Source: Selaginella moellendorffii (taxonomy: Eukaryota > Plantae > Lycopodiophyta). Taken from it: a stretch of DNA of 64,000 bases. Both the position numbers and the translations under genes were made by a program. The notes under the pieces are model-generated. The model did no database searches, was not told where the DNA came from, and saw only the letters and a program-made list of their open reading frames with translations. Of this stretch, positions 34,070 to 62,733 are shown in pieces. The stretch spans positions 372,001 to 436,000 of the forward strand of contig NW_003314290.1 in NCBI RefSeq assembly GCF_000143415.4, given 5' to 3'. Position 1 is the first letter of the stretch. Every line of letters starts with the position of its first letter.

Positions 34070-37000
34070 CTTGGCAATGCGGAAGAACTAGGTTCCTAAG
34101 CTATGATCTGTAGTGTGTTTTAAATATAAGTTGGTGCACCGGCGTAGGGAGTCACGCTAGGCATCTTGTGTGATGCCGTTCGTAGATGCATATACGGAGG
34201 TTGGGTTCGAGTCCCAACCCTCTAGTGCTTGGGTTCGAGTCCCAAATCACTAGGGCGTGGTGATGGTTTGGAATATGAGGACACTCATATTTCGGTGGTC
34301 ATGGACTCTCAGTGGGGAGACTGGTTTGGGCACACCGCCAAAAGAGGGATGCCTTGGAGTCATGATGCATGGTTAGATTGCTTATTGTGAAAGCTCGGCA
34401 TATCTAACTTGAACGCTTTGGTGCAAGTGGCACCAAGGACGTGGTGAGTGAGATGGGGACACCTAATCTTAGTTGCTATGGACCCTTGGCCGTAAGGGTT
34501 GGCTTGGATGCACCGCCAAGTGTGGGGGATGCCCCCGGGGTTATAGTCAACAACTTGAAGGTACAAATACCTCTTGGCAACTCTGTTAAGGTGCCAAGGT
34601 GAGATCATTAGGTGATCTTATGGCCAAATAAAGACAAGGTCCTTGGTTGGCTAAGGAAGGAAGTTCCTGGTTCAAAATGTTGATTTGAACTATTTAAGAT
34701 GGTGTGGCTTGGTCAAAGTGATTAAGTGGGAAGAGCACCTAAGGGAAATAAGCTGTGTCTATGCAATGGCATAGTGAGTCCGAGGAAAGTAGTCTCTATA
34801 AGAGATCCATGGGAGGGTCACGAAGTTGGGCCGTGGATAGAGCCCATAGTAGAAGATGCTAAAGAGACGTACTAGGAGTGAACATCCTCCGGACTTGGCA
34901 AAGAAGAATCTTTGCTATGGAATCGAATGGATACCTCGAAAATGGAGATAGTGATCCTATGTTGCTGGGTGCAACAATCAAGGATAGGAGCAAAGGACTA
35001 GTGGCCAAGTTTGGGCCATGGAATTTAATGGAAGGGATCCAAATAGCAAAGTTAGCCAAGGAATACTAATGTGTTTGATGCTAACGGCTTGTGGGAAAGG
35101 AAGTGGACTTCCAAGGATGGATTCCTAAGTGCTCCAATTTGGCGAAGTAAAAGCTCCAAGTGAGGGAGCGGCAAAGTAGCCAAAAGATAGGGCCGTGAAC
35201 AGCCCTAGCACAAAATATGATAACTGGAACTCAGTGCCAAAGGTGGCATGAAATCGAACAGAAGATGATGGTGCCCTCAAGTGGAGAACTTCCTAGGATG
35301 AGGAAGTGGAGTTGCACAATATGTGCAATGCAAGGTGTCGGAGACACCTAGGAAATTGACTTCGAGAAGTCAGAATTAAAAGTTCCAAAGTGCAAGGGTT
35401 ATAGCGCTGGAAAGTGAGACCACTCGAGAACGAGTAGTGGGATCGAGTTAGAAAAGGTGTCTCTAACAGGTTTAGGGAGAACTAAACCAATAAAAGGAGA
35501 GAACCACCACAAGTGGTCAAATGAGCCTTTAAGTTGGAGAGGCTATGCTCCTTAGAGGATGGACAAGGCATGGTGAGCCTTGGGTGTCAAACCATAGACA
35601 GATATTGGCTGGGTGCCAAGGATGGAAATGGTAACACATGCGGGTGTTACTTTATGAAAGGGTTTATCGTTCGATGAGGACATCGAACTTCATCTATGGG
35701 TGGTGGAGTTGTGAGACACAAAATCCCTAGGCCCCAAAGTGGAGCCGGAAGGGTGCCATGTGGTGGTGGCCAAAGCGAAAACCAAACGAGCGTAACACAT
35801 TTGGACTAAAAGCCCTGACTTGAAAGGTCGAGAGCGGGAGTGGAACTCCCAACAAAGTGCTCGAGGAACGAGCACGAAGGGAGCAATAAGCGAGGCTCCA
35901 AAAAAGGACCCAAAAGGACCAACACATGACACGTGGAAGTGTCCAAGATGGACCCGAGTTGGAGTCTGAAGTGGAGTCCAAGAAGCACCCCAAGATGGAG
36001 TCCGAGGTGGAGTCCGAGGTGACCCAAGATAGAGTCCGAGATGGATCCAAGATGGAGTCCGAAATGGACCTAAGATGGAGTCCGAGATGGAGTCTGAGGT
36101 GGAGTCCGAGGTGGAGTCCGAGGTGGACCCGAGATGGACCCGAAATGGAGTCCGAGATGGAGTCCGAGATGGACCCAAGATGGAGTCCGAGATGGACCTG
36201 AGATGGAGTCCGAGATGGAGTCCGAGATGGACCCGAGATGGAGTCCGAGATGGAGTTCAAGATGGACCCGAGATGGAGTCCGAAGTCGAGACCGGGACCG
36301 AGACCGAGACCGGGACCGAGACCGAGACCGGGACCGAGACCGAGACTGAGATCGGGACCGAGACCGAGGCCGAGGCCGAGACCGAGGCCGAGGCCGAGAC
36401 CGAGGCCGAGGCCGAGACCGAGGCCGAGGCCGAGACCGAGGCCGAGGCCGAGACCGAGGCCGAGGCCGAGACCGAGGCCGAGGCCGAGACCGAGTCCGAG
36501 TTCAAGTCTGAGAGGGTGAAAGCCCAAAGCGTTCGTCTCCCAGACCCTAGGGGGTTTGGTGAGCTCCAAAAGTATAGTAGGGTGAGGACTGCAGTGGAGC
36601 CAGTTTGGCCAGGAAAGGCCAGTTTGGCCCAGGAAGGCCGGACCCAGTGTTGGGTGATGAGCTGCTCACTGGGAAGTCCAAGACTAGAGTGAACACAGAC
36701 CGACAAGCAGGGTAGTTTGGTGAAGTGTTCAAGAGCCGGCTCTAGTTCCCCCGGGAGATCGACTGGCCGATGCTCCCAGTCCAAGTGTGGGTGGCACTAC
36801 TTACTTGGATACCTGGTGTGGCTCAACGGAACCTCGCTCTAAGCCCATGGCTAGAGCACCAAAAGGCGAGAGGTGGGGAGAGTACCCATGAGGCTTGCGT
36901 AAGGCCACGGTGTTCCAAAATGTTGTCCCAAAGTCCCAAACGGTGAAAGGGAAGAGGAACAATCCTCTAGTGCCGTGACCAAAGATACGGTCACATGGTG

Positions 37001-44837: not shown

Positions 44838-47540
44838 ATGATCGCTGCTCGACGCTTCTGTGACGAGCTTCACAGCGTCAAGCTCGTCGTGTCTAACCAA
44901 GGTATGTTTGTTCCTTCATCTCAAAACCTTTCGGATTATCTTCGCAGGAAACATCCATTCATGAAGCGAGTAGTTTGCTTTCTTTCGAGTAGCATTTTAA
45001 AGGCCTCGTTGCTCCGGTAGCCAGGAAAATCTTCACGTAACTTGTCCCAAGGTGCATAGGTCTATCTTTTTCCCACTCTGTTCTATGTGGCCACTGTATT
45101 GTAGAGCAAAATGTAAGTCGCCCGGATCGAAACAAGACCTTTTCCAAGCAAAGTTGGTTGCCGCTCGTCATGTTCCTTGCGTAGATCCTGCATTTGATCT
45201 CACGCTTTTCTATTGCATCAAGAACCAGACAAGTGTTAAACCTAGAAACCTACTTTAAACGTTTTGAGGGTTAGGGCTTTACAATATTATGGCACTTCTC
45301 TGCTTCGTCGTCGACGCCTCGCGCCTCCAGGGCGCTGTTCTTGGATCGATCCAGCAGGTACGATCGCCATGCAGGCCTGCATTGGCATTGGCTTGGCTGA
45401 TCTTGATCGATTCAGTGCCTGTTGCGGCTTGCCAATCTAGCGGTGTTGCGATCACACCGGAGCGGCGCGCTGCCGGCGATCGAGAGCATAGGCTTGTGCG
45501 CCATCAAATTCGATCCGGGGGAGGAATCTTACAAGGTATGGATCTCTTAGTCTTTACCTTTCTCATGGATCCCTCTTGACTTTCAGCTGGAGATTGTCTT
45601 TGAGCCCCGAGCGCCTTTCAGCTACAGAGATTTCCACTACGCTGTTGTGAATGGTCTCACGGCTGCTTCTGCGATGTCCCAAGAAGGAACTGGACAAGGT
45701 AAACGGACATAACACTTTTCGTTTCACTAACTAACAACTCGATTCGATCGTTCCAGTGTCAAGCTTGTCTTCTCTACTTTCAAGTCAGTGGTCGCCAGAA
45801 ACAGCAACCAAGAGAATTGTCGTGATCACCAATTGTTTCTGTGAGCCCGCTGCATCCTTTAGACAGGCAATTCTCGTAAGTCCTACTCCAAATACGTAGC
45901 TAGTAACTTGGATGAAATCACTCTTTGTGTTTTGCAGGAAGCAGCGGCCAGATGCATCATGATTGACTTCATCGAGCTCGACCTCTCCGATCATACCAAC
46001 GACCAATGCCTGTACCCTCAGCCCAAGCTCACAGGAGAATTTCATGTCGATATCACGGAGTTCGAGAACTGCACCTTTCAGAGACTGCAATGGAGTTCGT
46101 TGCAAAATGGCTCCCTTTGCGTGCTCATGGTGTTTCTGATTGCTTTTGCCAGATTCAGCAAACATGTCACGTCTCGTCAAAGAGTGGCTGCAAGAACTTG
46201 GAACCGATGACGAAGGGTCACTCGAAGGAGTGCTTTGCTTCCAGTCACCTTTGCTCAACTCTACCAGGAAGATTTTTTGCACGCTTTATCCCGCCGTGTT
46301 GCGACTTCATGACGTGATAAAACCATGCCAGGTCTGTTTCCGAGGTTCTATCATATTTTCTTACCTGACATTTACAAATTCAGGCCTGTCGGTGCCATGG
46401 ATTACCGCTCGGTTCAATCTTACACTGCAAGAGAGCGATTTGTCCCGTCACAGGAAGTGACCTGGATGACCATGATCTTGCAAGAAGCTGTCTTCAAGTT
46501 GGAGAGGACACGGTAATGCAAATGCCTTCGCTGGTTGCTCCTCCAGAGCCTGGTGCAGCTGCTTACTTCCACGTAATTGGCTCCGTCTATCTAGCGCTGC
46601 TTAGTGAAAGTGTGCTATTTGGCATGCCGTACGTGGTGGTTTCTTCTTCGGAGGCCGACATTGAACTAAATCCTGGAGGGGCTGTTTCAACAAACAATGA
46701 TCACGGTACCATAGCATGCACTTTACATTTTTAGATCTGCTAACTCTGTCTGTTGTCCAGTCTTCGCAGCTCTTTGCCAAGAGTTGCACTCTAAGGACAC
46801 GGGCCTTCTCTGTAAGTCCGACACCGACATTGAAACTGGATGTCCTACTTCGTTCATCTGTTTCTACATTCTGTTGCCATCACAAAATGGCTCTCTCCTG
46901 GCCAAGGTAAACATTTGTTTTCGTATCTATCCCCATAAACTACGTTTCCCACCTTAGAGAATTGCCACGTCTGAGGAGCTGCTGCCGTTTCCTCCAGCCA
47001 TGCGCACCCCAACAAGCGTGCCTGACGATGTGAGGGACATGGTCAGCTTGTCTTTATCCAAGGTAAAAGGAAGGGAAAGGAGCGGTACTTATTTTGCGAT
47101 TTCTTTAGATGGAAGCGCAATCATACGATCCATTGCAGCATGAACGAGGCTGCGACTCGAAGCTTAGCAACGTTGTAAGCGAAAGCTTGCAGTTTCGGTT
47201 AGTTTATAGGTTTTAGGCACACATACCTCACTTCGTTTTGAATTTCAGTTCGTCAGCTCCGGAAGAGATAAGCCTCAGACCAAATAAGCAGTTTGTAACT
47301 GCAACCGCGGTTCTGGCTCAGAGCGCTGAGCAACCAATTGGAAGGCTTCGGAAGAATCTTCATAACGTTCTTCCTAGGCAGCAAAATTCAACAACACAAA
47401 AGCCATCATTGCCGCTCAACGCCTCACAAGTTTCCAAAGGAAGGTCGAGGAAGACAAAGTCGTGACAACGCAAGCGTCTAATAAGGTGTTGATATTACCA
47501 TTTTATTCTTGCTACTTATTTCATGTTACAGGTCAACGTG
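44838..47540 (+). pseudogene. Degenerate multi-exon gene, possibly a CxC/KDZ-type transposase remnant
   Basis: Many short GT-AG introns and frameshifted Cys/His-rich segments (CIMIDF..LDL.DH..DQCL, ACRCHG). The family call is speculative. Confidence 0.25.
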
Positions 47541-47735
47541 AATAAAATACCGACCAGGTAAGCTTGTAAGAATTATAGTCCTGCTTACGAGTAAAGCTTG
47601 CAGCAACTGATACGTATCGACAGCGTTTTAACTGCAAGAGCTGAGAGTTATGCGGGCATACAGTGGCCGCCGTTAGGAGATTCCGACAATGCCTGATTCA
47701 CTCCATTGGAAGCACCCAATCTTTTTCGAAGGACT

Positions 47736-49910
47736 CTAGAAGAACAGTGGGGATAAATACCTGAAGGACAGAATAGCGCTGGGTACAAATGCGACGACTC
47801 CAAGAGCAACTCCCATCCCAACGATGCCGCCGAAGCCATCGTCGCCACCCCGTGAAAAACTTTGTGGCGTGGCATCAACCGGGGCGGCACAGCCCGGGAC
47901 CTCGAGATGGTTGCACAGGCGGGGATTTCCATCGAGGATAAAAGTTCCAGTCTGGGGGCCCTGGGGAACGATTCCAGACAGGTTGTTATACGAGACGTTG
48001 AGCCGGGTGAGAGTGCCGAGACTCGCAAAGCCGCCCGGAATGCCACCTTGGAGGAGATTGTGCGACATGTCGACCGTGTCCAGAGTCGGGATGGTTCCAA
48101 AGCCTGTCGGGATTTCTCCTGTGAGAGAATTGTAGGCGAGACCAAGGACTATAAGATCCTCCATCCTGCCAAGTTCAAGCGGTATCTCTCCAGTGAGGTT
48201 GTTGTTCGAGACGTCCAAGTAAATGGGGCTGCTGAGATCGAGAGTAACCGGGGGAAAGAAACCGACGTGAGCATCACACCTGGTTCTCGCGGCAAGCAAT
48301 GCTTCAAAATCCTCCAGCGCAATTCCCTGGACTCCGAAAACTCCACTCGCTCCAGTGCAGGTTGGAAGAGCCAGCGCCGGTGTCACGTACCTCAACTCTC
48401 CCAAGTTTCTCTCTACTCGAGGTACCAGTGTCAGGACGCTACTCGAGCTTTTGCCGATGCGAGCAGGGATATTTCCACTCAGCAAGTTGCCGGCAAAGTC
48501 TATCACCAGCAAATTCTCGCACTGCTCGAGCTCTGATGGAATCTCTCCTTGCAGGCGATTGTCTCTTAGCTGGAGTATGGTCATCCTGTGGAGGCGTCCC
48601 AGCGCAGCAGGTATCTCACCACTAAGCCTGTTGTTGCTCAAGCTCAACCATTGCAGGTCTTGCAGGTCGGAGAGCTGTGATGGAACCTCTCCCTCGAAAC
48701 GATTGAAACTCAGCATCAAGTTGACCAGGTTTTTGCATTTTGCCAAAGCGGATGGTATTTGTCCTTCGAAGCTATTCGCCCAGAGGATCAGGTGCCTGAG
48801 CTGCGGATGGTTTTCGCATAGGCTGCTGGGGAGTTCTCCGGCAAGCGTGTTGAAGCTCACGTCCAGCATCTTCAAACTAGCACACCTTTGGAGGGAGGCA
48901 AACACATTGTGCTCACCATCCAGGCGATTGTTCTGTAGGAGCAAACTTTCCAGGCTTGAGTTGGAGCTGCAAAGCTGCTGGTTTCCTATGGTGGTGAGAT
49001 TGTTGGAGCTGAGATCCATGTACCTCGTGAGCACTCCAATATGCGCTGGAACCTCACCCGTGAATTTGTTGTAGGCGGCATCGATCCTCTCAACGACGGG
49101 AAAGAAGCTGCTCAAGCTGGAGTTGTGCGAGCGCTGGCTTGCTCCAAACAGCGAGAAGAAATCCCCGGAGAAGGCGTTGCGAGCGATAGCGAGAACTTTC
49201 AGTGAGGTACATCTGCTTTCGGGAGCGAATAACTCTCCCGATATCTGGTTGAACGAGATGTTGATACTAATCAGGTTTTTGCAGCCGGGGAAAACGATCT
49301 GAGAGAGATTGTTGCTGGACAGGAAGACCTTTTGAAGATCAACGCAAGTGGAGAGGATCCTGGGAGGAAACTCGCCGACGAGCCGGTTGTTTGAGACGTC
49401 CAAGAGCGTCAAGTTGCAAGACCTCTCCCGGGAGAAGAGGGGCAAGGCAAGCATATCATCGCCAGTGAGCTCGTTGGAAGAAAGGTTGAGAGCTCTGATC
49501 GTCCCGCCGCAGTTCTCGAGGATCTGAAGCAGAAGATTATCATCGCCAGTGAGCTTGTTTTGAGACAAGTCGAGAGCTTCCAGGTTGCAACCTCGTAGCG
49601 AACGATTGGTGGACGACCCGGTGAAATTGCTCTGAGAGATGTGGAGCTTCTCTAGATGGGACAGGTCTTGGATCGCATCCAGCAGAGCAGGCCTGGGCAG
49701 TGATAGTGACTGAAGATCAAGTCCAGTGATCCGGCCCGAGCTGGAGCAGTTGACTCCATGCCAGTGACACGAATCTACGGCAGAACTCGTGTTCCAGGTA
49801 CTGAGTGTGGATAATGGATCGCTCACCTGGTTCTTAAAGCTCAAGAGCGTTGCACGATCTTCGCCTTTTGCAGCTGCCAGTGACAGAAGCACGAGAATTG
49901 CGAGCAACAT
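47736..49910 (-). CDS. LRR receptor-like protein without kinase, with BRI1/BRL-like island domain, ~724 aa
   Basis: Signal peptide MLLAILVLLSLAAAKG, LRRNT (LLSFK...DP...W...CHWHGVNC), ~20 plant LRRs, island domain, final LRRs, GNPRLC cap and a TM helix. Start placed at the ATG shared with copy 2. Confidence 0.9.
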   Translation of the reverse strand: MLLAILVLLSLAAAKGEDRATLLSFKNQVSDPLSTLSTWNTSSAVDSCHWHGVNCSSSGRITGLDLQSLSLPRPALLDAIQDLSHLEKLHISQSNFTGSSTNRSLRGCNLEALDLSQNKLTGDDNLLLQILENCGGTIRALNLSSNELTGDDMLALPLFSRERSCNLTLLDVSNNRLVGEFPPRILSTCVDLQKVFLSSNNLSQIVFPGCKNLISINISFNQISGELFAPESRCTSLKVLAIARNAFSGDFFSLFGASQRSHNSSLSSFFPVVERIDAAYNKFTGEVPAHIGVLTRYMDLSSNNLTTIGNQQLCSSNSSLESLLLQNNRLDGEHNVFASLQRCASLKMLDVSFNTLAGELPSSLCENHPQLRHLILWANSFEGQIPSALAKCKNLVNLMLSFNRFEGEVPSQLSDLQDLQWLSLSNNRLSGEIPAALGRLHRMTILQLRDNRLQGEIPSELEQCENLLVIDFAGNLLSGNIPARIGKSSSSVLTLVPRVERNLGELRYVTPALALPTCTGASGVFGVQGIALEDFEALLAARTRCDAHVGFFPPVTLDLSSPIYLDVSNNNLTGEIPLELGRMEDLIVLGLAYNSLTGEIPTGFGTIPTLDTVDMSHNLLQGGIPGGFASLGTLTRLNVSYNNLSGIVPQGPQTGTFILDGNPRLCNHLEVPGCAAPVDATPQSFSRGGDDGFGGIVGMGVALGVVAFVPSAILSFRYLSPLFF

Positions 49911-50199
49911 TCTCCCAAACAACCGAGTAAAGTGACTTGTGACCCCAGTGTCAAATTTGTTTCTTTTATCAGCCACATCAATCATCATCGCTTTTGTTGA
50001 AGTCAAGGGTGACTGCTCGCGCTCATTCTCCGACGCGGAAGTCAAAAGGTGAAGTCATTTTTCTTTCAAAAGTCCGTGTTCCACTAGTTTGCAAGATCAC
50101 AAATCAATAATTTGCTTTGCGCATAGATACATGCTTCGCCCCGCCTGCTATTAAGAAGAGGAGGATGTGGATCATATCCTCAATGTTCCTTGGAGAGCA

Positions 50200-50564
50200 G
50201 AGCAATGACAACATATGACTTACGAGGTATGTGCATTAGGTCTCGGGCGACAAGAGAGAAATCTTTTCAGGAGTTTCTCGTGCGACAAGAGAGAAATCTT
50301 TTCAGGAGTTTCTCGCGCTTGAAGAGAGGATGGGGTTCGCTAGCTCATGGATTACAAAGGTGTGGAAGTTTGGGCATGTTTGCTCGGGATGCCGAGCTCC
50401 AGTGTAATCTCTTTTTGGATTTTTCTTGGAGGGAATTTTGCAATAAGGAGGAAGAACTGCGCGAGTTCGATTGCAGTCTCAAGTTCCACGTACATTGTAT
50501 CAAGCAGTGCCCAATCTGCAAAGTCTGTGACAATCGCGGCATTCACAAGTTGATGGAATGCTAG
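50200..50564 (+). pseudogene. RING-H2 E3 ligase pseudogene fragment
   Basis: Frameshifted remnants of DNMTYE|ELLALEERMG...KFHVHCIKQ...CPICK, homologous to the RING exons at 63.2-64 kb. Confidence 0.7.
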
Positions 50565-52215
50565 ACAAACTTTTCCTTTTCGCATGGACCCAGAGCAGCC
50601 ATGTGTGATGGGGCGATTTGCGAAGAGGGATAGTGGACACCATGATACGAATATGAACCTGATTTCTGATTGCTTTTGTCAGATTCAGCAAACATGTCAC
50701 GCCTCGTCAAAGAGTGGCTGCAAGAACTTGGAGCCGATGACCAAGGGTAACTCGAAGGAGTGCTTTGCTTCCAGTCACCTTTGCTCAACTCTACCAGGAA
50801 GATTTTTTGCACGCTTTATCCCGCCATGTTGCGACTTCGTGACGTGATAAAACCAGGTTCTATCATATTTTCTTACCGCAAGATCATGTTCATCCAGGTC
50901 ACATCCTGTGACGGGACAATCGCTCTCGTGCAGTGTAAGATTGAACCGCCATGTCACCGACAGGCCTGAATTTAGAAATGTCTGCAAGAAGCTGTCTTCA
51001 AGTTGGAGAGGACACGGTAATGCAAATGCCTTTGCTGGTTGCTCCTCCAGAGCCTGGTGCAGCTGCTTGCTTCCACGCAATTGGCTCCGTCTATCTAGCG
51101 CTGCTATCGTGAAAGTGTGCTATTTGGCATGCCGTACGTGGTAGTTTCTTCTGGAGGGGCTGATTCAACAAACAATGATCACGGTACCATAGCATGCACT
51201 TTACATTTTTGGATCTGCTAACTCTGTTTGTTGTCCAGTCTTCGCAGCTCTTTGCCAAGAGTTGCACTCTTAAGGACACGGGCCTTCTCTGTAAGTCCGA
51301 CATCGACATTGAAACTGGATGTCCTACTTCGTTCGTCTGTTTCTACATTCTGTTGCCATCACAAAATGGCTCTCTCCTGGCCAAGGTAAACATTTGTTTT
51401 CGTATCTATCTCCATAAACTACGTTTCCTACCTTAGAGAATTGCCACGTATGAGGAGCTGCTGCCTTTTCCTCCAGCCATGCGCACCGCAACAAGCGTGC
51501 CTGACGATGTGAGGGACATGGTCAGCTTGTTTTTATCCAAGGTAAAAGGAAGGGAAAGGAGCGGTACTTATTTTGCGATTTCTTTAGATGGAAGCGCAAT
51601 TATACGATCCATTGCAGCATGAACGAGGCTGCGACTCGAAGCTTCGCAACGTTGTAAGCGAAAGCTTGCAGTTTCGGTTAGTTTATAGGTTTTAGGCACA
51701 CATACCTCACTTCGTTTTGAATTTCAGTTCGTCAGCTCTGGAAGAGATAAGCCTCAGACCAAATAAGCAGTTTGTAACTGCAACCGCGGTTCTGGCTCAG
51801 AGCGCTGAGCAACCAATTGGAAGGCTTCGGAAGAATCTTCATAACGTTCTTCCTAGGCAGCAAAATTCAACAACACAAAAGCCATCATTGCCGCTCAACG
51901 CCTCACAAGTTTCCAAAGGAAGGTCGAGGAAGACAAAGTCGTGACAACGCAAGCGTCTAATAAGGTGTTGATATTACCATTTTATTCTTGCTACTTATTT
52001 CATGTTACAGGTCAACGTGAATAAAATACCGACCACGTAAGCTTGTAAGAATTTGTAGTCCTGCTTACGAGTGAAGCTTGCAGCCTCTGATACGTATCGA
52101 CAGCGTTTTAACTGCAAGAGCTGAGAGCTATGCGGGCATACAGTGGCCGCCGTTAGGAGATTCCGACAATGCCTGATTCACTCCATTGGAAGCACCCAAT
52201 CTTTTTCGAAGGACT

Positions 52216-54389
52216 CTAGAAGAACAGTGGCGAGAAATACCTGAAGGACAGAATGGCGCTGGGTACAAATGCGACGACTCCAAGAGCAACTCCCATCCCA
52301 ACGATGCCGCCGAAGCCATCGTCGCCACCCCGTGAAAAACTTTGTGGCGTGGCATCAACCGGGGCGGCACAGCCCGGGACCTCGAGATGGTTGCACAGGC
52401 GGGGATTTCCATCGAGGATAAAAGTTTCAGTCTGGGGGCCCTGGGGAACGATTCCAGACAGGTTGTTATACGAGACGTTGAGCCGGGTGAGAGTGCCAAG
52501 ACTCGCAAAGCCGCCCGGAATGCCACCTTGGAGGAGATTGTGCGACATGTCGACCGTGTCCAGATTCCGGATGGTTCCAAAGCCTGTCGGGATTTCTCCT
52601 GTGAGAGAATTGTAGGCGAGACCAAGGACTATAAGATCCTCCATCCTGCCAAGTTCGAGCGGTATCTCTCCAGTGAGGTTGTTGTTCGAGACGTCCAAGT
52701 AAATGGGGCTGCTGAGATCGAGAGTAACCGGGGGAAAGAAACCGACGTGAGCATCACACCTGGTTCTCGCGGCAAGCAATGCTTCAAAATCCTCCAGCGC
52801 AATTCCCTGGACTCCGAAAACTCCACTCGCTCCAGTGCAGGATGGAAGATTCAGCGCCGGTATCACGAACCTCAACTCTCCCAAGTTTCTCTCTACTTGA
52901 GGTACCAGTGTCAGGACGCTACTCGAGCTTTTGCCGATGCGAGCAGGGATTTTTCCACTCAGCAAGTTGCCGGCAAAGTCTATCACCAGCAAATTCTCGC
53001 ACTGCTCGAGCTCCGATGGAATCTCTCCTTGCAGGCGATTGTCTCTTAGCTGGAGTATGGTCATCCTGTGGAGGCGTCCCAGCGCAGCAGGTATCTCACC
53101 ACTAAGCCTGTTGTTGCTCAAGCTCAACCATTGCAGGTCTTGCAGGTCGGAGAGCTGTGATGGAACCTCTCCCTCGAAACGATTGAAACTCAGCATCAAG
53201 TTGACCAGGTTTTTGCATTTGGCCAAAGCGGATGGTATTTGTCCTTCGAAGCTATTCGCCCAGAGGATCAGGTGCCTGAGCTGCGGATGGTTTTCGCATA
53301 GGCTGCTGGGGAGTTCTCCGGCAAGCGTGTTGAAGCTCACGTCCAGCATCTTCAAACGAGCACACCTTTGGAGGGAGGCAAACACATTGTGCTCACCATC
53401 CAGGCGATTGTTCTGTAGTAGCAAACTTTCCAGGCTTGAGTTGGAGCTGCAAAGCTGCTGGTTTCCTATGGTGGTGAGATTGTTGGAGCTGAGATCCATG
53501 TACCTCGTGAGCACTCCAATATGCGCTGGAACCTCACCCGTGAATTTGTTGTAGGCGGCATCGATCCTCTCAACGACGGGAAAGAAAGTGCTCAAGCTGG
53601 AGTTGTGCGAGCGCTGGCTTGCTCCAAACAGCGAGAAGAAATCCCCGGAGAAGGCGTTGCGAGCGATAGCGAGAACTTTCAGTGAGGTACATCTGCTTTC
53701 GGGAGCGAATAACTCTCCCGATATCTGGTTGAACGAGATGTTGATACTAATCAGGTTTTTGCAGCCGGGGAAAACGATCTGAGAGAGATTGTTGCTGGAC
53801 AGGAAGACCTCTCGAAGATCAACGCAAGTGGAGAGGACCCTGTTAGGAAACTCGCCGACGAGCCGGTTGTTTGAGACGTCCAAGAGCGTCAAGTTGCAAG
53901 ACTCTCCCGAGAGAAGAGGGGCAAGGCATGCATATTATCGCCAGTGAGCTCGTTGGAAGAAAGGTTGAGAGCTCGGATCGTCCCGCCGCAGCTCTCGAGG
54001 ATCTCAAGCAGAAGATTATCATCGCCAGTGAGACTGTTTCGAGACAAGTCGAGAGCTTCCAGGTTGCAACTTCGCAGCGAACGGTTGGTGGACGATCCGG
54101 TGAAATTGCTCTGAGAGATGTGGAGCTTCTCTAGATGGGACAGGTCTTGGATCGCATCGAGCAAAGCAGGCCTGGGCAGTGATAGTGACTGAAGATCAAG
54201 TCCAGTGATCCGGCCCGAGCTGGAGCAATTGACTCCATGCCAGTGACACGAATCTACACCAGAACTCGTGTTCCAGGTACCGAGTGTGGATAATGGATCG
54301 CTCACCTGGTTCTTGAAGCTCAAGAGCGTTGCACGATCTTCTTCTTTTGCAGCTGCCAGTGACAGAAGCACGAGAATTGTGAGCAACAT
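52216..54389 (-). pseudogene. Second LRR receptor-like gene copy with a 1-nt frameshift near 53902
   Basis: ORFs 53889-54389 and 52216-53892 match copy 1 in different frames (GACCTCTCCC versus GACTCTCCC on +). Could be a sequencing error. Confidence 0.8.
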
Positions 54390-54654
54390 TCTCCCTTCAG
54401 TCGAGTTTCGTGTTTAGGTTGCAACCGAGTGAAGTGACTGACCCCAGTCAAATTTGTTTCTTTTATCAGCCACATAATCCTCATCGCTTTTGGGTGACTG
54501 CTCGTGCTCAGCCAGTCAAAAAGTGAAGTCATTTTTTTTTTCAAAAGTCCGTGTTCCATTATTTTGCAAGATCACAAATGAATCATTTGCTTTGCCCATA
54601 GATACATGCTTTGTTAAGAAGAGAGGATGTGGATCATATCCTCTGGAGAGCAGA

Positions 54655-54975
54655 TCTGCAATGACAACATGACTTACGAGGTATGTGCATTAGTTCTCGT
54701 GCGACAAGAGAGAAATCTTTTCAGGAGCTTCTCGCGCTTGAAGAGAGGATGGGGTTCGTTAGCTCATGGATTACAAAAGTGTGGCATGTTTGCACGGGAT
54801 GCCGAGCTCCAGTGTAATCTCTTCTCGGAGTTTTCTTGGAGGGAATTTTGCAATAAGGAGGAAGAACTGGGCGAGTTCGATTGCAGTCTCACGTAGATTG
54901 TATCAAGCAGTGGCTTGGAGTGCCCAATCTGCAAAGTCTAACAATCGTGGCATTCAGAAATTGATGGAATGCTAG
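54655..54975 (+). pseudogene. RING-H2 E3 ligase pseudogene fragment (duplicate)
   Basis: DNMTYE|ELLALEERMG...CIKQWL...CPICK remnants with deletions. Confidence 0.7.
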
Positions 54976-55342
54976 ACAATCTTTTCCATTTCGCATGGAC
55001 CCTGTGATAGGGCGATTTGCGGGACAACATGAAACGAATATGAATCTCAGGGATTTTTCTCTCTCTGAGGTTTGTGTGTGATTACTACCTGGCTGCCACG
55101 GCAAAAGTTTTGCGACCAGTGGAAATAATTGTGAAATGTCCCTGCTAGCACCAAGTTGTAAGCTATCCCAATCGCGGACACGAATACGTCGACGTGACGA
55201 GAGATTCATGGCTGGGGAGAATGAGCGATCTCGCTTCCTCCACGCTAAAGGCAGGCGTGTCAGGCGAATCTTTCCGAACATTGTGGAAGATCCTTTAAAA
55301 AATATATATTTGAGATTCCTTCTTCTTCTTTGCGTCCTGGCG

Positions 55343-56638
55343 ATGGAGATCCACTCGCGGATGTGCGTGGCCAAGTCCGACGTCCCCGCCTCCGTCCCTC
55401 GCGTGGTGCTCCTCTCGCCGCTCGACCTCTTCCACACCAGCCAGATGCCCATCGTCCTCTTCTACGAGAACGCCCCCGCCGGGGCGGCGGCGCGCATCGA
55501 ATCGGGGCTGGCAACCGTGCTGGATCACTACCCGGAGCTCGCTGGACGGATCGGGCGCGACGAGCTGGGCCGCCACTGCATCCATCTCAACAACGAAGGC
55601 GCGATCTTCGTCGAGGCGGTATGCGCGTCCGAGGAGCTGGCTCCCTTCCTGGACAAGCGCGGGAACGACGTCAAGGATCTCGTCGGCTCGTCGACGCTGG
55701 AGCTGGGCGATGGGATGAACCGCGTGCCGCTCATCATCCAGGTGACGCGCTTCGCTTGCGGGGGGCTGGCCCTCAGCTGGGAGGGACACCACCGCGTGTG
55801 CGATGGCTCCGCCCACACGCAGTTCTTGCTCAACTGGGCATATGCTGCAAGAACCGGATCCCTCACTCCAGGATTCGTCCCGCTCATCCACGACCGATCT
55901 TTCTTGTTTCCCAGAAATCCCCCGGTCGTGGAGGATCCACTAGTAAAGTTCATCCACAAGAAAATGTCGCGCACCACCGTCCCGGGGCAAGAGGTCCTCA
56001 CTCTCACGTCAAACCTGACGAGCAAGCAGATCTCCCACCTCAAATCTCTCTGCGGGAACAAATACACCACCTACGAAACACTGAGTGCGCACTTCTGGAG
56101 GTGCATGACCGCAGCCAGGAACTTCGAAGACCGGAGCACTCTGGTCGGGCATTTTTGTCCTGCGAATGGTCGTTCCATCCTCAATGCCCCGCCCGGGTTT
56201 TTTGGTAACGCCATTTACCTCACTTTTGTCCAGACGAGCGCCGCGGATCTGCTGGATGGATCGCTGGAGCACGCCGCGGGGCTCATCCGGCAGGCCGTCA
56301 AGCGCGCCAGCAACCGTGTGTTCCTCGAGTCGGTGATCGACTACCTGGCGCTGGAGCAAGCGAGTGAAGATGCCCAGCCGCCGCAGCCCGAGGCCAAGGA
56401 CCAGAGCTGGATCCCAAATGTCATGATCCCGTGCTGGTCGAAGTTTCCATTATATGAGGTTGACTTTGGGTTTGGCAATCCATTCCGGTTCTCCACTGTG
56501 AATATGGGGATTGAGGGGGCGTTCACGATTGGGCCACCGCGCAAGGAGGGAATCACGGAGGTGCTCATCAATGTGCGCAAGGAGCACGCCCAGAGCTTGC
56601 TCACTCACCTTGGCAACTGTACTCAGGGATATTTCTAG
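55343..56638 (+). CDS. BAHD acyltransferase, intronless, ~431 aa
   Basis: HXXXD motif (HRVCDG), DFGFG motif, YPELAGRI, QVTRFACGG and FFGNA. Start placed at the ATG shared with the paralog. Confidence 0.93.
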   Translation: MEIHSRMCVAKSDVPASVPRVVLLSPLDLFHTSQMPIVLFYENAPAGAAARIESGLATVLDHYPELAGRIGRDELGRHCIHLNNEGAIFVEAVCASEELAPFLDKRGNDVKDLVGSSTLELGDGMNRVPLIIQVTRFACGGLALSWEGHHRVCDGSAHTQFLLNWAYAARTGSLTPGFVPLIHDRSFLFPRNPPVVEDPLVKFIHKKMSRTTVPGQEVLTLTSNLTSKQISHLKSLCGNKYTTYETLSAHFWRCMTAARNFEDRSTLVGHFCPANGRSILNAPPGFFGNAIYLTFVQTSAADLLDGSLEHAAGLIRQAVKRASNRVFLESVIDYLALEQASEDAQPPQPEAKDQSWIPNVMIPCWSKFPLYEVDFGFGNPFRFSTVNMGIEGAFTIGPPRKEGITEVLINVRKEHAQSLLTHLGNCTQGYF

Positions 56639-59090: not shown

Positions 59091-60536
59091 TTACATTGGA
59101 CAAAAGGTCCTCACGAATTCGTTCATGCTCTCGTAAGACGACCCTCCCGGCTCCATCGCCGCCGCCACCACTCCCTTCATCTCCATCGCCCTTTTCCTCA
59201 TCGCGGCTCCCTCCTCCCCCGCCAGTAGCCCCTCGATCGCCGCCGCAATACCCCGCTCGTTCACGTCGCAATCCGGCCCGTGCCCGACCTCCACACCGAT
59301 CCCCCACTTGTGCGTCATGAGCAGGCTGTTCATGTTTTGCTCTGCGCCAAACGCCCAGCACAGCGTCGGCACCCCAGCGCACAGCGCCTCCAGCGTCGAG
59401 TTCCACCCGCAGTGCGTAAAGAAGCCGCCGATGGATGGATGATCCAGGATAGCTCTCTGGGGAGCCCAATCCACGACAAGCCCCTGCCCAGCCAGCCTCC
59501 TCTTCACCGAGTCGTAGAACTCGTCCTCGGCCTCGGGTACCACCTTTCTCATGCTCCACACAAACGCCCGCTTGCTCGACTCCAGCCCGGCGACCAGCTT
59601 CTCAAACTGGTGGAGCGGGAGGATGGATTCCGTCCCAAACGCGATGTAGAGCACCGAGAGCGGTGGCTTTCCATCCAGCCAGTGGATGACCGGGTGATCC
59701 ACCGCGTCCTCAAGGACCTCGGGCGGGATGAGGGGGCCGACTGGGAAGTAGCGCTGGAGCTGGCTGCGCTGGACGGCCACCACCTCGGCCTCGATCTCCT
59801 CGACGGTATTGGCCAGGAATCCCTGCGCTCGCGATGAGTTCTCGAAGCAAGCGATCGCGAACGGAGAGAAATCGTGGTCGACGCCGTAGAAGCAGAGTGG
59901 TAGCCGGGTGGTGGCGAGCGGCACCGGCATTCCGGGCAGGACCGAGACGATCTCGTCCTTGTGTGGGCTCGCTGCAAGCAAGCCGAGGTTAGTCAACGGC
60001 CCGAGTTTTAGTCAATGAGAAGTGTTGACTTAACTGTGGACTGGGATGTGGCCCGTGGATATGAGCAGTGGGACGCTGGCGAAGATGCTCTCGCTCAGAG
60101 TGGCGGCGGTCCAGAACACCACCCGTGGAATATGGAGCTCGTCGGCGGTGTCCTGGCACTTGACGAAGCAATCCGAGATGAGGAGGCTGGGCTTCGTGAC
60201 CTTCCCATTCTCTGCTGGGACTGCTGCTTGATCTAGATCTAGCTTGAACTCCTCCCGGATCACCTGGGTCAGCGCCGCGATGGGCTGCGAGGGGTTGTCG
60301 CCGCGCAGTGGCTCCGGGAATGGGACGAGGCGGATGCTGGCGCGAGCGGTGTCGAAACCGGGGGACTTGAGCACCCGGCGTTGGGCGACGGGGAGGTGCT
60401 CGTGGAAGACAATGATAGTTACCTCGACTGCCCGGTGGGCGAGCTGCCGGGCGAGCTCTAGCGCCGGGTTGAGGTGCCCGAATCCAGTCGCCGGCACCAG
60501 CACTACGGTGTGGTGGCGCTGCTTGGTGGGAGCCAT
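59091..60536 (-). CDS. Family-1 UDP-glycosyltransferase, two exons (60536-60035, 59971-59091), ~460 aa
   Basis: N-terminal GHLNP catalytic His and PSPG box WAPQRAILDHPSIGGFFTHCGWNSTLEALCAGVPTLCWAFGAEQ. A 63-nt GT-AG intron with an ACTAAC branch point joins the ORFs in frame. Confidence 0.93.
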
Positions 60537-61461: not shown

Positions 61462-62733
61462 TTAGTTGCCGAGGTGAGCGAGCAGGCTCTGGGCGTGCTC
61501 CTTGCGCACATTGATGAGCACCTCCGTGATCCCGTCCTTGCGCGGCGGCCCAATCGTGAACACCCCCTCGATCCCCACATTCACGGTGGAGAACCGGAAC
61601 GGATCGCCAAACCCAAAGTCAACCTCATACAGCGGAAACCTCGACCAGCACGGGATCATGACATTCGGGATCCAGCTCTGGTCCTTGGCCTCGGCCTGCG
61701 GCGGCCGATCATCCTCGCCCGCCTGCTCCAGCGCAAGGTAGTCAATCACCGACTCGAGAAACACCCGGTTGCTGGCGCGCTTGACGGCCTGCCGGATGAG
61801 CCCCGCGGCGTGCTCCAGTGATCCATCCAGCAGATCCGCGGCGCTCGTCTGCACGAAGGTGTGGTAAATGGCGTTGCCAAAAAACCCGGGCGGGGCATTG
61901 AGGATGGAACGACCATTCGCGGGACAAAAATGCCCGACCAGAGTGCTCCGGTCTTCGAAGTCCCTGGCCGCGGTCATGCACCTCCAGAAGTGCGCGCTCA
62001 AAGTCTCGTAGGTGGTGTATTTGTTCCCGCAGAGAGATTTGAGGTGGGAGATCTGCTTGCTCGTCAAGTTTTCCGTGAGAGTGAGGACCTCTTGCCCCGG
62101 GACGGTGGTGCGCGACATGGGCTTGTGGACGAACTCCACTAGTGGATCCTCCACGACCGGGGGATCTCTGGGAGACAAGAAAGATCGGTCGTGGATGAGC
62201 GGGACGAATCCTGGAGTGAGGGATCCGGTTCTTGCAGCAGATGCCCAGTTGAGCAAGAACTGCGTGTGGGCGGAGCCATCGCACACGCGGTGGTGTCCCT
62301 CCCAGCTGAGGGCCAGCCCCCCGCAAGCGAAGCGCGTCACCTGGATGATGAGCGGCACGCGGTTCATCCCATCGCCCAGCTCCAGCGTCGACGAGCCGAC
62401 GAGATCCTTGACGTCGTTGCCGCGCTTGTCCAGGAAGGGAGCCAGCTCGGAGGAGCACACCGCCTCGACGAAGATCGCGCCTTCGTTGTTGAGATGGATG
62501 CAGTGGCGGCCCAGCTCGTCGCGCCCGATCCGCCCCGCCAGCTCCGGGAAGTGATCCAGCACGGTTGCGAGCCCCGACTCGATGCGCGCGGCTGCTCCGG
62601 CGGGGGCGTTCTCGTAGAAGAGGACGATGGGCATCTGGCTGGTGTGGAAGAGGTCGAGCGGCGTGAGGAGGACCAGCGGAGGGGCGGTGGCGGGGACGGA
62701 CTTGGCCACGCACATCCGCGAGTGGATCTCCAT
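61462..62733 (-). CDS. BAHD acyltransferase paralog, intronless, ~423 aa
   Basis: Same HRVCDG and DFGFG motifs. Near-identical inverted copy of 55343-56617. Confidence 0.93.
   Translation of the reverse strand: MEIHSRMCVAKSVPATAPPLVLLTPLDLFHTSQMPIVLFYENAPAGAAARIESGLATVLDHFPELAGRIGRDELGRHCIHLNNEGAIFVEAVCSSELAPFLDKRGNDVKDLVGSSTLELGDGMNRVPLIIQVTRFACGGLALSWEGHHRVCDGSAHTQFLLNWASAARTGSLTPGFVPLIHDRSFLSPRDPPVVEDPLVEFVHKPMSRTTVPGQEVLTLTENLTSKQISHLKSLCGNKYTTYETLSAHFWRCMTAARDFEDRSTLVGHFCPANGRSILNAPPGFFGNAIYHTFVQTSAADLLDGSLEHAAGLIRQAVKRASNRVFLESVIDYLALEQAGEDDRPPQAEAKDQSWIPNVMIPCWSRFPLYEVDFGFGDPFRFSTVNVGIEGVFTIGPPRKDGITEVLINVRKEHAQSLLAHLGN

What the first reader, a model, noticed from the sequence alone, without database searches (positions are those of the whole stretch)
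48230..48460. Kinase-less receptor with a brassinosteroid-receptor-type island domain
Seen: between LRR blocks lies GELRYV...TCTGASGVFGVQGIALEDFEALLAARTRCDAHVGFFPPVTLDLSSPIYLDVSNNNLTGEIP, then the final LRRs, a TM helix and no kinase. From recalled knowledge, BRI1/BRL islands follow the pattern F(V/I)RN...C.GAG.L.EF.GIR.E.L...C...Y.G...GSMI(Y/F)LD.SYN; the Cys pair and the C.GA.G...GI..E spacing match. Canonical BRI1 receptors are generally regarded as a seed-plant feature. Inference: if this is a lycophyte, it may be a relic or neofunctionalised steroid/small-molecule-binding ectodomain working as a receptor-like protein. The two copies differ in a cluster of island residues (RYVTPALALPT versus RFVIPALNLPS) while neighbouring LRRs are nearly identical, hinting at ligand-site diversification.
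Basis: partly seen in the sequence, partly recalled or inferred. Interest (0 to 1): 0.72.

Follow-up and report, generated by a model that had tools for sequence, protein, structure and literature searches.

The report
Kinase-less BRI1-like receptor in Selaginella
This spikemoss locus carries a tandem pair of genes for a cell-surface protein whose outer part descends from the plant steroid-hormone receptor family (BRI1/BRL) but has no kinase and lacks the known steroid-holding residues. Selaginella therefore does keep BRI1-family genes, but probably not a classical steroid sensor.

Summary
On the minus strand, 47736-50045 is an intronless ORF in Selaginella moellendorffii. It encodes a signal peptide, an N-terminal cap, about 17 LRRs, a 71-residue island (48228-48440), 4 LRRs, an acidic juxtamembrane stretch, a GxxxG-rich membrane helix and an 8-residue tail. 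No kinase is encoded anywhere in the 64 kb.

A 95%-identical tandem copy (52216-54389) carries a 1-bp frameshift in this assembly. One RNA contig has the intact frame.

Only BRI1/BRL1-3 align with the protein through the island.
- An island-only Selaginella profile finds only BRI1's island in the whole PDB (E 0.008).
- Island profile against island profile gives 92.7% probability (P 4e-7).
- Trees place the Selaginella family as sister to seed-plant BRI1/BRL (100/99), also with island columns removed.
- Grouping with Cf-9-type RLPs is rejected (AU p 0.001).

The evidence against a steroid sensor:
- Pfam's Island model does not match.
- AlphaFold leaves the island at low confidence.
- Steroid-pocket residues (Tyr597/Tyr599, Trp564, the NGSM motif) are not kept.

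BRL-like receptor-like proteins were reported in 2024, and RefSeq already names these genes BRI1-like. Two earlier notes of this scan reached the same reading on other DNA of this genome.

The parts
47736..49985 (-). Copy 1 coding sequence, intronless. The database protein P0001 (749 aa) starts at 49985. The likely true start is the Met at 49910, which opens a signal peptide MLLAILVLLSLAAAKG. The stop codon is 47736-47738.
   Evidence: ORF. P0001 matches 49985..47739 at 100%. Signal-peptide-like start.
49743..49862 (-). N-terminal LRR cap (LRRNT_2, residues 62-101 of the 769-aa ORF) with the Cys93/Cys100 pair
   Evidence: Pfam PF08263, E 3e-10; Cys positions
48441..49727 (-). N-terminal block of about 17 plant-type LRRs (residues about 107-535)
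   Evidence: Pfam LRR_1/LRR_8/LRR_4; repeat cores with 24-residue spacing
48228..48440 (-). Island domain, 71 residues (536-606), with Cys563 and Cys590. The core C.GxxG.F.VQGIxLEDFE...C aligns with BRI1 residues 606-638.
   Evidence: Low AlphaFold confidence.
47940..48227 (-). Last four LRRs (the 'C3' region, residues 607-702) that follow the island, as in BRI1, PSKR and LRR-RLPs
   Evidence: pLDDT 88-99
47943..47954 (-). QxxT motif (Q698-T-G-T701) in the terminal LRR, at the position of BRI1 GQFET. Ngou et al. 2024 tie this motif to SERK co-receptor contact.
   Evidence: Alignment; motif definition from PMC10834447
47838..47939 (-). C-terminal cap (Cys711, Cys719) and outer juxtamembrane stretch ending in ...SRGGDD (net acidic)
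47763..47837 (-). Membrane helix GFGGIVGMGVALGVVAFVPSAILSF, with GxxxG at 733, 739 and 745
47739..47762 (-). Eight-residue cytoplasmic tail RYLSPLFF; no kinase follows
   Evidence: tblastn for kinase domains negative over the whole window
52216..54389 (-). Copy 2, a tandem duplicate about 95% identical at DNA level. It is intact from 53892 to the stop (558 codons). The upstream part, with a signal-peptide Met at about 54389, is in another frame.
53900..53903 (-). 1-bp deletion in copy 2 relative to copy 1 (GAGAGGTC to GAGAGTC), a frameshift at about codon 188. A contig of run X12 has the missing base; a contig of run X1 matches the window.
   Evidence: table 4: 'put in behind 53901', X12 24 of 24, X1 0 of 66
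52708..52920 (-). Island of copy 2. It carries five amino-acid differences from copy 1 (R to Q, Y to F, T to I, A to N, T to S) within 20 codons, spanning the end of the preceding loop and the first part of the island.
47021..55002 (.). The two units of the tandem duplication (47021-50591 and 51500-55002)
   Evidence: blastn, 95.3% over 3298 columns plus 87% over 321 columns

Best explanation
[quoted passage not shown] It belongs to a small Selaginella family of at least four loci, all without a kinase.

Shown here:
- The architecture is a signal peptide, cap, about 17 LRRs, a 71-residue island, 4 LRRs, an acidic juxtamembrane stretch, one membrane helix and an 8-residue tail.
- The island is a remote homologue of the BRI1 island.
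- The LRR scaffold alone places the family as sister to seed-plant BRI1/BRL.
- The genes are transcribed.

Inferred:
- The protein binds some small ligand or peptide in the groove between the island and the inner LRR face.
- It then docks a SERK-type co-receptor on the last four LRRs, where the QxxT motif is kept.
- Having no kinase, it signals through, or titrates, a partner kinase. For copy 1 the acidic juxtamembrane stretch and GxxxG helix are the features that let LRR-RLPs bind the adaptor kinase SOBIR1.

The ligand is most likely not brassinolide or castasterone bound in the BRI1 manner, because the pocket residues are not conserved.
For: Organism and family:
- The closest proteins are all S. 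moellendorffii and lack a kinase: P0001-P0004, P0006, P0027 and P0204/P0268/P0289.
- No kinase is encoded in the window.

Island:
- Only BRI1 and BRL1-3 align in one stretch through the island in the PDB. PSKR1, RXEG1, GSO1 and FLS2 match only LRRs. The same holds for 76 BRI1/BRL proteins against EMS1/MSP1, LRR-XI and LRR-XII.
- Island-only tests: BRI1/BRL profile against the Selaginella islands scores 7-11 bits for the copy-1-type islands and P0004 (2.5 bits for P0006), and at most 1 of 2000 shuffles reaches the observed score for copy 1 and P0004.
- hhalign gives 92.7% probability, P 4.2e-7, over 55 columns.
- hmmsearch of the six-sequence Selaginella island profile against the PDB hits only the six BRI1 sequences (E 0.008-0.012), at BRI1 606-638. 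The next hit has E 2.

Trees:
- Selaginella 100/100, seed-plant BRI1/BRL 100/98, both together 100/99.
- With island columns dropped, SH-aLRT is still 99.
- Twelve Cf-9-type RLPs form their own clade, and the AU test rejects Selaginella plus RLPs (p 0.001, lnL difference 25.3).

Other support:
- Foldseek top 22 hits are BRI1/BRL at 34-37% identity, against 26% for PSKR1.
- QxxT motif, acidic juxtamembrane stretch and GxxxG helix. Their meaning comes from Ngou et al. 2024, PMC10834447.
- Transcription: RNA-like runs hold contigs over both copies. Run X12 is shown to be RNA by four GT..AG joints of 46-55 nt next door.
Against: - Pfam PF20141 (Island) does not match any Selaginella member at E up to 10, though it scores 111 bits on BRI1 and 69 bits on BRL2.
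- AlphaFold leaves the island at pLDDT 26-62 with either alignment, so its fold is not shown. The Foldseek ranking rests on LRRs and on an alignment made mostly of BRI1/BRL sequences.
- The trees lack PSKR/PSY1R, NILR1 and the BRLs of ferns, mosses and liverworts, which I could not fetch.
- SERK docking and use of a partner kinase are inferred from motifs only. GxxxG is seen in the copy-1 type only, not in P0204, P0006 or P0004.
- dN/dS between the copies is 0.71, and copy 2 is frameshifted in this haplotype. That fits relaxed constraint on at least one copy.
Confidence: 0.82

Rival explanations
1. It is a working steroid sensor. The divergent island still holds a brassinosteroid or a related sterol, and the kinase-less receptor, with a SERK and a partner kinase, accounts for the growth response of Selaginella to brassinosteroids in the absence of a BRI1 kinase.
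For: - Selaginella elongates in response to applied brassinosteroid, makes CYP90-type enzymes, and is reported to lack a BRI1 homologue (Cheon 2013, PMC3862569; Zheng 2022, PMC9223546).
- The island is a BRI1-type island by remote homology.
- Some pocket positions are conservatively kept: Tyr642 to Phe, Met657 to Ile, Phe658 to Tyr.
- The QxxT motif is kept.
Against: - The Tyr597/Tyr599 equivalents are not aromatic in the MAFFT or the hhalign alignment. Li 2022 (PMC9570414) found that every substitution other than Phe impaired signalling.
- Trp564 is Val, NGSM is LSSP, and the island has an insertion of 6-8 residues and an 8-residue deletion.
- The Pfam Island model does not match.
- BRL2, which keeps far more of the island, is treated as a non-receptor in that literature (PMC9570414).
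Confidence: 0.08
2. It is an ordinary immune-type LRR receptor-like protein (Cf-9/RLP23 class), and its likeness to the BRI1 island reflects only the shared ancient 'island plus 4 LRR' plan.
For: - No kinase, a short tail, an acidic juxtamembrane stretch and a GxxxG helix, as in SOBIR1-dependent RLPs (PMC10834447).
- Tandem duplication and clustered amino-acid changes are typical of immune receptors.
- RLPs and the BRI1/PSKR group share an origin (PMC10834447).
Against: - Twelve Cf-9-type RLPs form a separate clade (100/100), and the AU test rejects joining them with the Selaginella family (p 0.001).
- RXEG1 matches only the last four LRRs.
- The island has no Kx5Y or Yx8KG motif, read directly from the sequence. 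More than 75% of RLP islands carry one (PMC10834447).
Confidence: 0.06
3. The locus is a decaying relic with no function: remains of a BRL gene on the way to being lost.
For: - Copy 2 is frameshifted in this assembly.
- dN/dS between the copies is 0.71.
- The steroid pocket has decayed.
Against: - Copy 1 keeps a 2.2-kb open frame with signal peptide, caps, regular LRRs and membrane helix.
- An intact-frame allele of copy 2 is present in RNA.
- Four diverged paralogue groups (about 40% identity) all keep the same architecture and the island core C...QG(I/L)xLE(D/E)...C. That requires long-term purifying selection.
Confidence: 0.04

Closest known systems
BRI1, BRL1 and BRL3 (brassinosteroid receptor kinases, LRR-RLK subgroup Xb)
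   Same: - The island of about 70 residues sits before the last four LRRs.
- The island core is alignable, with both Cys, the G after the first Cys, and GI..E.L.
- The QxxT motif in the last LRR is kept.
- The LRR scaffold is the sister group in trees.
- They give the best PDB sequence and Foldseek matches.
   Different: - No juxtamembrane or kinase domain.
- 21 rather than 25 LRRs.
- The Tyr/Phe pair at 597/599, Trp564 and NGSM are not kept.
- The island has an insertion and a deletion, and Pfam Island does not match.
- The juxtamembrane stretch is acidic and the helix is GxxxG-rich.
BRL2 (vascular BRI1-like kinase that does not act as a brassinosteroid receptor)
   Same: A BRI1-family ectodomain with a changed position 597 (Leu in BRL2). 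It shows that a BRI1-type island can serve something other than brassinolide sensing (PMC9570414).
   Different: BRL2 keeps the kinase, Trp564 and an island that Pfam recognises at 69 bits. The Selaginella family branches outside the BRL2 + BRI1 + BRL1/3 clade.
BRL-like LRR receptor-like proteins reported by Ngou et al. 2024 (Nat Commun 15:308, PMC10834447)
   Same: Kinase-less proteins inside or beside the BRI1/BRL ectodomain clade, of unknown function. S. moellendorffii was among their 350 genomes.
   Different: Those described are 'highly similar to BRL1/BRL3' and keep the steroid-binding residues. The Selaginella ones are about 35-40% identical to BRI1/BRL proteins in the island-flanking 270 residues, do not keep those residues, form a lineage-specific family, and are not discussed in that paper's text.
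Cf-9 / RLP23 / RXEG1-type LRR-RLPs
   Same: No kinase, a short tail, the island-plus-4-LRR plan, an acidic outer juxtamembrane stretch and GxxxG in the helix (copy-1 type).
   Different: They form a separate clade, and joining is rejected by the AU test. The Selaginella island has no Kx5Y or Yx8KG motif. RXEG1 does not align through the island.
PSKR1 (phytosulfokine receptor)
   Same: Subgroup Xb, with an island before the last four LRRs.
   Different: PSKR1 matches only the four terminal LRRs (query 108-204 of the 221-residue piece). It scores 207 bits against 369 for BRI1, and 26% against 34-37% identity in Foldseek. It was not placed in a tree.

Membership tests
BRI1/BRL ectodomain lineage (LRR-RLK subgroup Xb, BRI1 clade) | Island domain inserted before the last four LRRs | tested here: met
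   A 119-residue gap between LRR cores, followed by 4 LRRs; alignment
BRI1/BRL ectodomain lineage (LRR-RLK subgroup Xb, BRI1 clade) | Island matches Pfam PF20141 'Brassinosteroid receptor island domain' | tested here: not met
   No match at E up to 10 for copy 1, P0002, P0004 or P0006. BRI1 scores 111 bits and BRL2 69.5 bits in the same scan.
BRI1/BRL ectodomain lineage (LRR-RLK subgroup Xb, BRI1 clade) | Island homologous to the BRI1 island by more sensitive, island-only tests | tested here: met
   hhalign 92.7%, P 4.2e-7. The PDB-wide hmmsearch hits only BRI1 606-638, E 0.008. Shuffle control: 1 of 2000 (copy 1) and 0 of 2000 (P0004).
BRI1/BRL ectodomain lineage (LRR-RLK subgroup Xb, BRI1 clade) | Ectodomain groups with BRI1/BRL in a tree, not with other LRR receptor classes | tested here: met
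   Support 100/99 for Selaginella plus BRI1/BRL against EMS1/MSP1, LRR-XI, LRR-XII and Cf-9-type RLPs. SH-aLRT 99 without island columns. Caveat: PSKR/PSY1R, NILR1 and non-seed BRLs were not sampled.
BRI1/BRL ectodomain lineage (LRR-RLK subgroup Xb, BRI1 clade) | Cytoplasmic serine/threonine kinase domain | tested here: not met
   The stop codon comes 8 residues after the membrane helix. There is no kinase Pfam match and no kinase-like sequence in the 64 kb.
Functional brassinosteroid receptors (BRI1, BRL1, BRL3) | Aromatic residues (Tyr or Phe) at positions 597 and 599 of the island | tested here: not met
   MAFFT aligns Arg and Val there; hhalign aligns Pro and Val. No YxY or FxF motif occurs in any Selaginella paralogue. 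Criterion from PMC9570414. The alignment of this segment is unstable.
Functional brassinosteroid receptors (BRI1, BRL1, BRL3) | Trp564 in LRR21 and the NGSM motif at the island/LRR22 border | tested here: not met
   Val (Met or Thr in paralogues) in place of Trp; LSSP in place of NGSM
Functional brassinosteroid receptors (BRI1, BRL1, BRL3) | Island folds as in BRI1 (small beta-sheet plus short helix packed on the LRR inner face) | tested here: inconclusive
   Island pLDDT is 26-51 with the Selaginella-only alignment and 36-62 with the BRI1/BRL alignment. The predicted strands and helix resemble BRI1 only in the second model, which depends on its alignment.
Functional brassinosteroid receptors (BRI1, BRL1, BRL3) | Binds brassinolide or castasterone | not testable with these tools
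   Needs a binding assay with the purified ectodomain
SOBIR1-dependent LRR receptor-like proteins (Cf-9/RLP23 class) | No kinase, short tail, acidic outer juxtamembrane stretch, GxxxG in the membrane helix | tested here: met
   ...SRGGDD then GFGGIVGMGVALG..., with GxxxG at 733, 739 and 745, and the tail RYLSPLFF. The paralogues keep the acidic stretch but not GxxxG.
SOBIR1-dependent LRR receptor-like proteins (Cf-9/RLP23 class) | Kx5Y or Yx8KG motif in the island; ectodomain groups with RLPs | tested here: not met
   The island has one Lys and one Tyr, 20 residues apart (sequence). The RLPs form a separate clade and the AU test rejects joining them (p 0.001).
PSKR/PSY1R clade | Ectodomain and island align with PSKR1 | tested here: not met
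   PSKR1 aligns only with the four terminal LRRs and scores 207 against 369 bits. No tree with PSKR could be built.

The most novel reading that the evidence does not exclude
This kinase-less BRI1-lineage family is how Selaginella perceives brassinosteroids or a lycophyte-specific steroid. A divergent island pocket would bind the hormone, and the receptor would signal through a SERK and a separate partner kinase. Steroid sensing by the BRI1-type island would then predate seed plants and would not need a kinase on the same protein.
Probability: 0.07. Interest if true: 0.85.

Novelty: new member of a known kind. Interest (0 to 1): 0.42.

Why it matters
Papers on brassinosteroid evolution state that Selaginella has no BRI1/BRL homologue, yet the plant responds to applied brassinosteroid (PMC3862569, PMC9223546). 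Those surveys required a kinase domain.

This locus and its paralogues show that the BRI1/BRL ectodomain lineage, island included, survives in a lycophyte as a small family of kinase-less receptor-like proteins. The family has diverged deeply, and copy 1 has RLP-like membrane features.

That corrects the 'absent' statement. It gives a natural example of the change from receptor kinase to receptor-like protein inside the BRI1 clade. It also supplies concrete candidates to test for ligand binding.

It is not a new kind of system. BRL-like RLPs were noted in a 350-genome survey in 2024, and RefSeq's automatic names already call these genes BRI1-like.

Tried and rejected
- **AlphaFold with a Selaginella-only alignment** was meant as a non-circular test of the island fold. 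The island came out at pLDDT 26-51, so it says nothing. With the BRI1/BRL alignment the island was still at 36-62. The Foldseek ranking is therefore given only as weak support.
- **The exhaustive HMMER search of 1.84 billion representatives** with the full protein. Its best 150 are swamped by giant multi-LRR gene models of 1,300-7,800 aa with up to 31 matched stretches. None has a Selaginella-type or BRI1-type island. It cannot show whether relatives exist outside Selaginella. Its one useful result was the paralogue P0204/P0268.
- **Island-only word search**. It found only the three S. moellendorffii proteins. This is limited by the need for exact 5-residue words.
- **The look-up of encoding contigs for P0002** found nothing on record.
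- **PSKR/PSY1R, NILR1 and fern, moss or liverwort BRL sequences for the tree.**
- **Considered and rejected:**
  - a hidden kinase exon downstream;
  - a generic Cf-9-type RLP;
  - the island match arising from flanking LRRs only (island-only tests);
  - tree placement driven by the island.
- **Copy 2 handling.** I analysed copy 2 as two separate reading-frame pieces and did not join them across the frameshift. The RefSeq model P0003, which bridges it, was used only as the database returned it.
Full report
**What is there**

The window is Selaginella moellendorffii. Its own protein and three near-identical or paralogous proteins of that species head the protein search.

On the minus strand, 47736..50045 is one uninterrupted ORF of 769 codons. 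The database protein starts at 49985. The Met at 49910 opens a typical signal peptide and is the likelier start.

Pfam finds an N-terminal LRR cap and many LRRs, and nothing else. The repeat cores show about 17 LRRs, then a gap of 119 residues between cores, then 4 LRRs.

After the last LRR come:
- a Cys-Cys cap;
- the acidic stretch ...SRGGDD;
- the helix GFGGIVGMGVALGVVAFVPSAILSF, with three GxxxG motifs;
- the tail RYLSPLFF and a stop.

tblastn with the kinase halves of a BRI1 and a BRL2 protein finds nothing in the 64 kb (best E 4.2).

**The second copy**

51500-55002 is a tandem duplicate of 47021-50591, at 95.3% DNA identity. From the stop codon back to codon 192 the two copies align without gaps.

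They differ at 16 amino-acid-changing and 7 silent codons. This gives dN 0.014, dS 0.020 and a ratio of 0.71.

Five of the 16 changes lie within 20 codons at the start of the island, including RYVTPALALPT versus RFVIPALNLPS. That is more clustered than chance (permutation p 0.015). Four more cluster in codons 208-219, far from the island.

Copy 2 also lacks one base at about 53901/53902, which shifts the frame at about codon 188. The RefSeq model P0003 steps over this with a 26-nt 'intron' and borrows a first exon at 55084-55281. I take that for a modelling artefact.

I read copy 2 as two separate frame pieces and joined nothing across the break.

**Reads**

Contigs of three RNA-like runs and one DNA-like run were laid on 48201-54200. 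All are contigs, so they show presence, not level.

- Run X12 is shown to be RNA by four GT..AG joints of 46-55 nt at 51182-51727.
- Its 1394-nt contig over copy 2 (52582-53974, 1.4% different from the window) carries the extra base after 53901 and so has the intact frame.
- The contig of run X1 matches the window exactly, frameshift included.
- Run X5 covers copy 1 from 48653 to 49979.

Both copies are therefore represented in transcript-like assemblies, and the frameshift is an allele or haplotype difference.

**Is the island a BRI1-type island?**

For:
- In the PDB, BRI1, BRL1, BRL2 and BRL3 align with the protein in one stretch that runs through the island. For example, query 321-719 aligns with BRI1 370-770.
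- GSO1, FLS2, PEPR1, PSKR1 and the RLP RXEG1 match only LRR runs.
- Among the 120 best database proteins, 76 BRI1/BRL proteins and the Selaginella paralogues span the island. EMS1/MSP1, LRR-XI and LRR-XII do not.
- MAFFT shows the shared core: first Cys, G two residues on, an aromatic or Leu, GI..E.(L/F), second Cys, an aromatic, then S.I(Y/F)LD.S.N.

Because LRR flanks could carry such alignments, I tested the island alone.
- A BRI1/BRL island profile scores copy 1 at 7.2 bits and P0004 at 11.3 bits. These are reached by 1 and 0 of 2000 shuffles. P0006 scores only 2.5 bits, reached by 62 of 2000.
- A profile of six Selaginella islands against a profile of 34 BRI1/BRL islands gives 92.7% probability and P 4.2e-7 over 55 columns.
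- The same Selaginella island profile searched against all 177,635 PDB sequences finds only the six BRI1 ectodomain entries (E 0.008-0.012). It aligns to BRI1 606-638, the island core from Cys609 to Cys635. The next hit has E 2.

Against:
- Pfam's Island model (PF20141) does not match any Selaginella member even at E 10, although it scores 111 bits on BRI1 and 69 on BRL2.
- AlphaFold leaves the island at pLDDT 26-51 with a Selaginella-only alignment and 36-62 with a BRI1/BRL alignment.
- The Foldseek ranking has BRI1/BRL in the top 22 places (E 3e-16 to 3e-13, 34-37% identity), then PSKR1 at 26%. It is LRR-driven and partly circular.

My reading is that the island is a remote but real homologue of the BRI1 island, and its fold is not shown.

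**Where the protein sits in the family**

Ectodomain-only trees (IQ-TREE, LG+C20) give:
- Selaginella family: 100/100;
- seed-plant BRI1 + BRL1/3 + BRL2: 100/98;
- the two together: 100/99, apart from EMS1/MSP1, LRR-XI and LRR-XII.

One of the first hits, P0120, turned out to be a Cf-9-type RLP, so I fetched its relatives and added twelve. They form their own clade (100/100) and the Selaginella + BRI1/BRL clade stays at 100/99.

Dropping the island columns leaves it at SH-aLRT 99. The AU test rejects Selaginella + RLPs (p 0.001).

The family branches before the BRL2 versus BRI1/BRL1/3 split, as the species tree would predict for a lycophyte.

The trees lack PSKR/PSY1R, NILR1 and the BRLs of ferns and bryophytes. 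None of the 120 best hits is named as a PSKR, PSY1R or NILR1 protein.

**The family in Selaginella**

There are four diverged groups, all too short for a kinase or lacking any kinase match:
- copy 1, copy 2 and the other-haplotype allele P0002;
- P0204/P0268 (784/788 aa), with P0204 on the same 1.89-Mb contig as the window;
- P0006/P0289/P0027 (687 aa);
- P0004 (695 aa).

All keep the island core C...QG(I/L)xLE(D/E)...C and an acidic juxtamembrane stretch. Only the copy-1 type has GxxxG in the helix.

**Steroid pocket**

Li et al. 2022 (PMC9570414) showed that positions 597 and 599 are Tyr/Tyr in BRI1 and Phe/Phe in BRL1/3, and that they separate receptors from non-receptors.

- In copy 1 the aligned residues are Arg and Val by MAFFT, or Pro and Val by hhalign.
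- The alignment of this first segment is unstable, but no paralogue has a YxY or FxF motif anywhere in it.
- Trp564 is Val and NGSM is LSSP.
- The island has an insertion of 6-8 residues and an 8-residue deletion.
- Tyr642 to Phe, Met657 to Ile and Phe658 to Tyr are conservative changes.

A BRI1-style brassinolide pocket is therefore unlikely. Some other ligand is possible.

**How it probably works**

- Shown: the architecture, the lineage and the transcription.
- Inferred from motifs and from Ngou et al. 2024 (PMC10834447): the last four LRRs with the kept QxxT motif dock a SERK co-receptor. The acidic juxtamembrane stretch and GxxxG helix of copy 1 resemble the features by which LRR-RLPs hold the adaptor kinase SOBIR1, which that paper reports in all land plants.
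- The protein would thus be a ligand-binding subunit that signals through, or sequesters, partner kinases.

**Comparison with what is known**

- Cheon et al. 2013 and Zheng et al. 2022 state that Selaginella has no BRI1/BRL homologue. Other surveys used its EMS1-like kinases as outgroup. All of these required a kinase.
- Ngou et al. 2024 reported kinase-less counterparts inside the BRI1/BRL ectodomain clade, of unknown function, in a survey that included S. moellendorffii. Their text describes ones highly similar to BRL1/3 that keep the binding residues, and it does not discuss Selaginella.
- RefSeq's automatic names already call these genes 'BRI1-like 3', 'BRI1-like 2' or 'BRASSINOSTEROID INSENSITIVE 1'.
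- Two earlier follow-ups of this scan, on other pieces of the same genome, reached the same reading. I tested the claims independently here.

**Verdict**

This is a new member of a known kind, the BRL-like LRR-RLPs. It is of moderate interest because it corrects a repeated statement about lycophytes and offers testable candidates. The steroid-sensor reading remains a long shot.

Noticed in passing
window 51182-51727 (+ strand), running on to about 52564: A 1208-nt contig of RNA run X12 shows four GT..AG joints of 46-55 nt. This indicates a small-exon gene on the + strand that converges on, and in the contig overlaps, the 3' end of copy 2. The homologous stretch lies downstream of copy 1 (47021-47736). 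No ORF of note was seen there.
   Followed up: no
window 49204-49283, inside the copy 1 coding sequence: A contig of run X5 skips 78 nt with GT..AG ends as read on the + strand, which is antisense to the receptor gene. Either a spliced antisense RNA overlaps copy 1, or an allele lacks one 26-residue LRR. A similar + strand joint lies in copy 2 at 53499-53555.
   Followed up: partly
window 53905-53930 and 55084-55281: The RefSeq model of copy 2 (P0003, 745 aa) bridges the frameshift with a 26-nt 'intron'. It takes its first 66 residues from a distant exon that overlaps the 5' end of the neighbouring acyltransferase gene on the other strand. This is probably a modelling artefact.
   Followed up: partly
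other-haplotype allele P0002 (SELMODRAFT_409609): The other-haplotype allele of copy 1 is modelled 51 residues (two LRRs) shorter, missing copy 1 residues about 358-408 of P0001. Whether this is a real deletion or a predicted intron is not known.
   Followed up: no
window 55136-56638 (+), 61462-62739 (-), 59091-59996 (-): Two BAHD-type acyltransferase genes (Pfam Transferase, E 1e-49 and 1e-50) flank a UDP-glycosyltransferase fragment, right next to the receptor pair. This may be a small specialised-metabolism cluster.
   Followed up: partly
window 14851-15606 (-) and 14125-14751 (-): Two adjacent ORFs. The first has a MAC/perforin domain (Pfam MACPF, E 6e-6). They are probably exons of one plant MACPF gene.
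   Followed up: partly
window 25853-29740 (+); 2039-3433, 8252-9402, 19923-20768, 35727-36692: A 1295-aa Ty3/gypsy-type gag-pol ORF, together with several blocks of a short tandem repeat that translate as GLHLG/SISDS-type runs. A run of N lies at about 2.4-3.3 kb.
   Followed up: no
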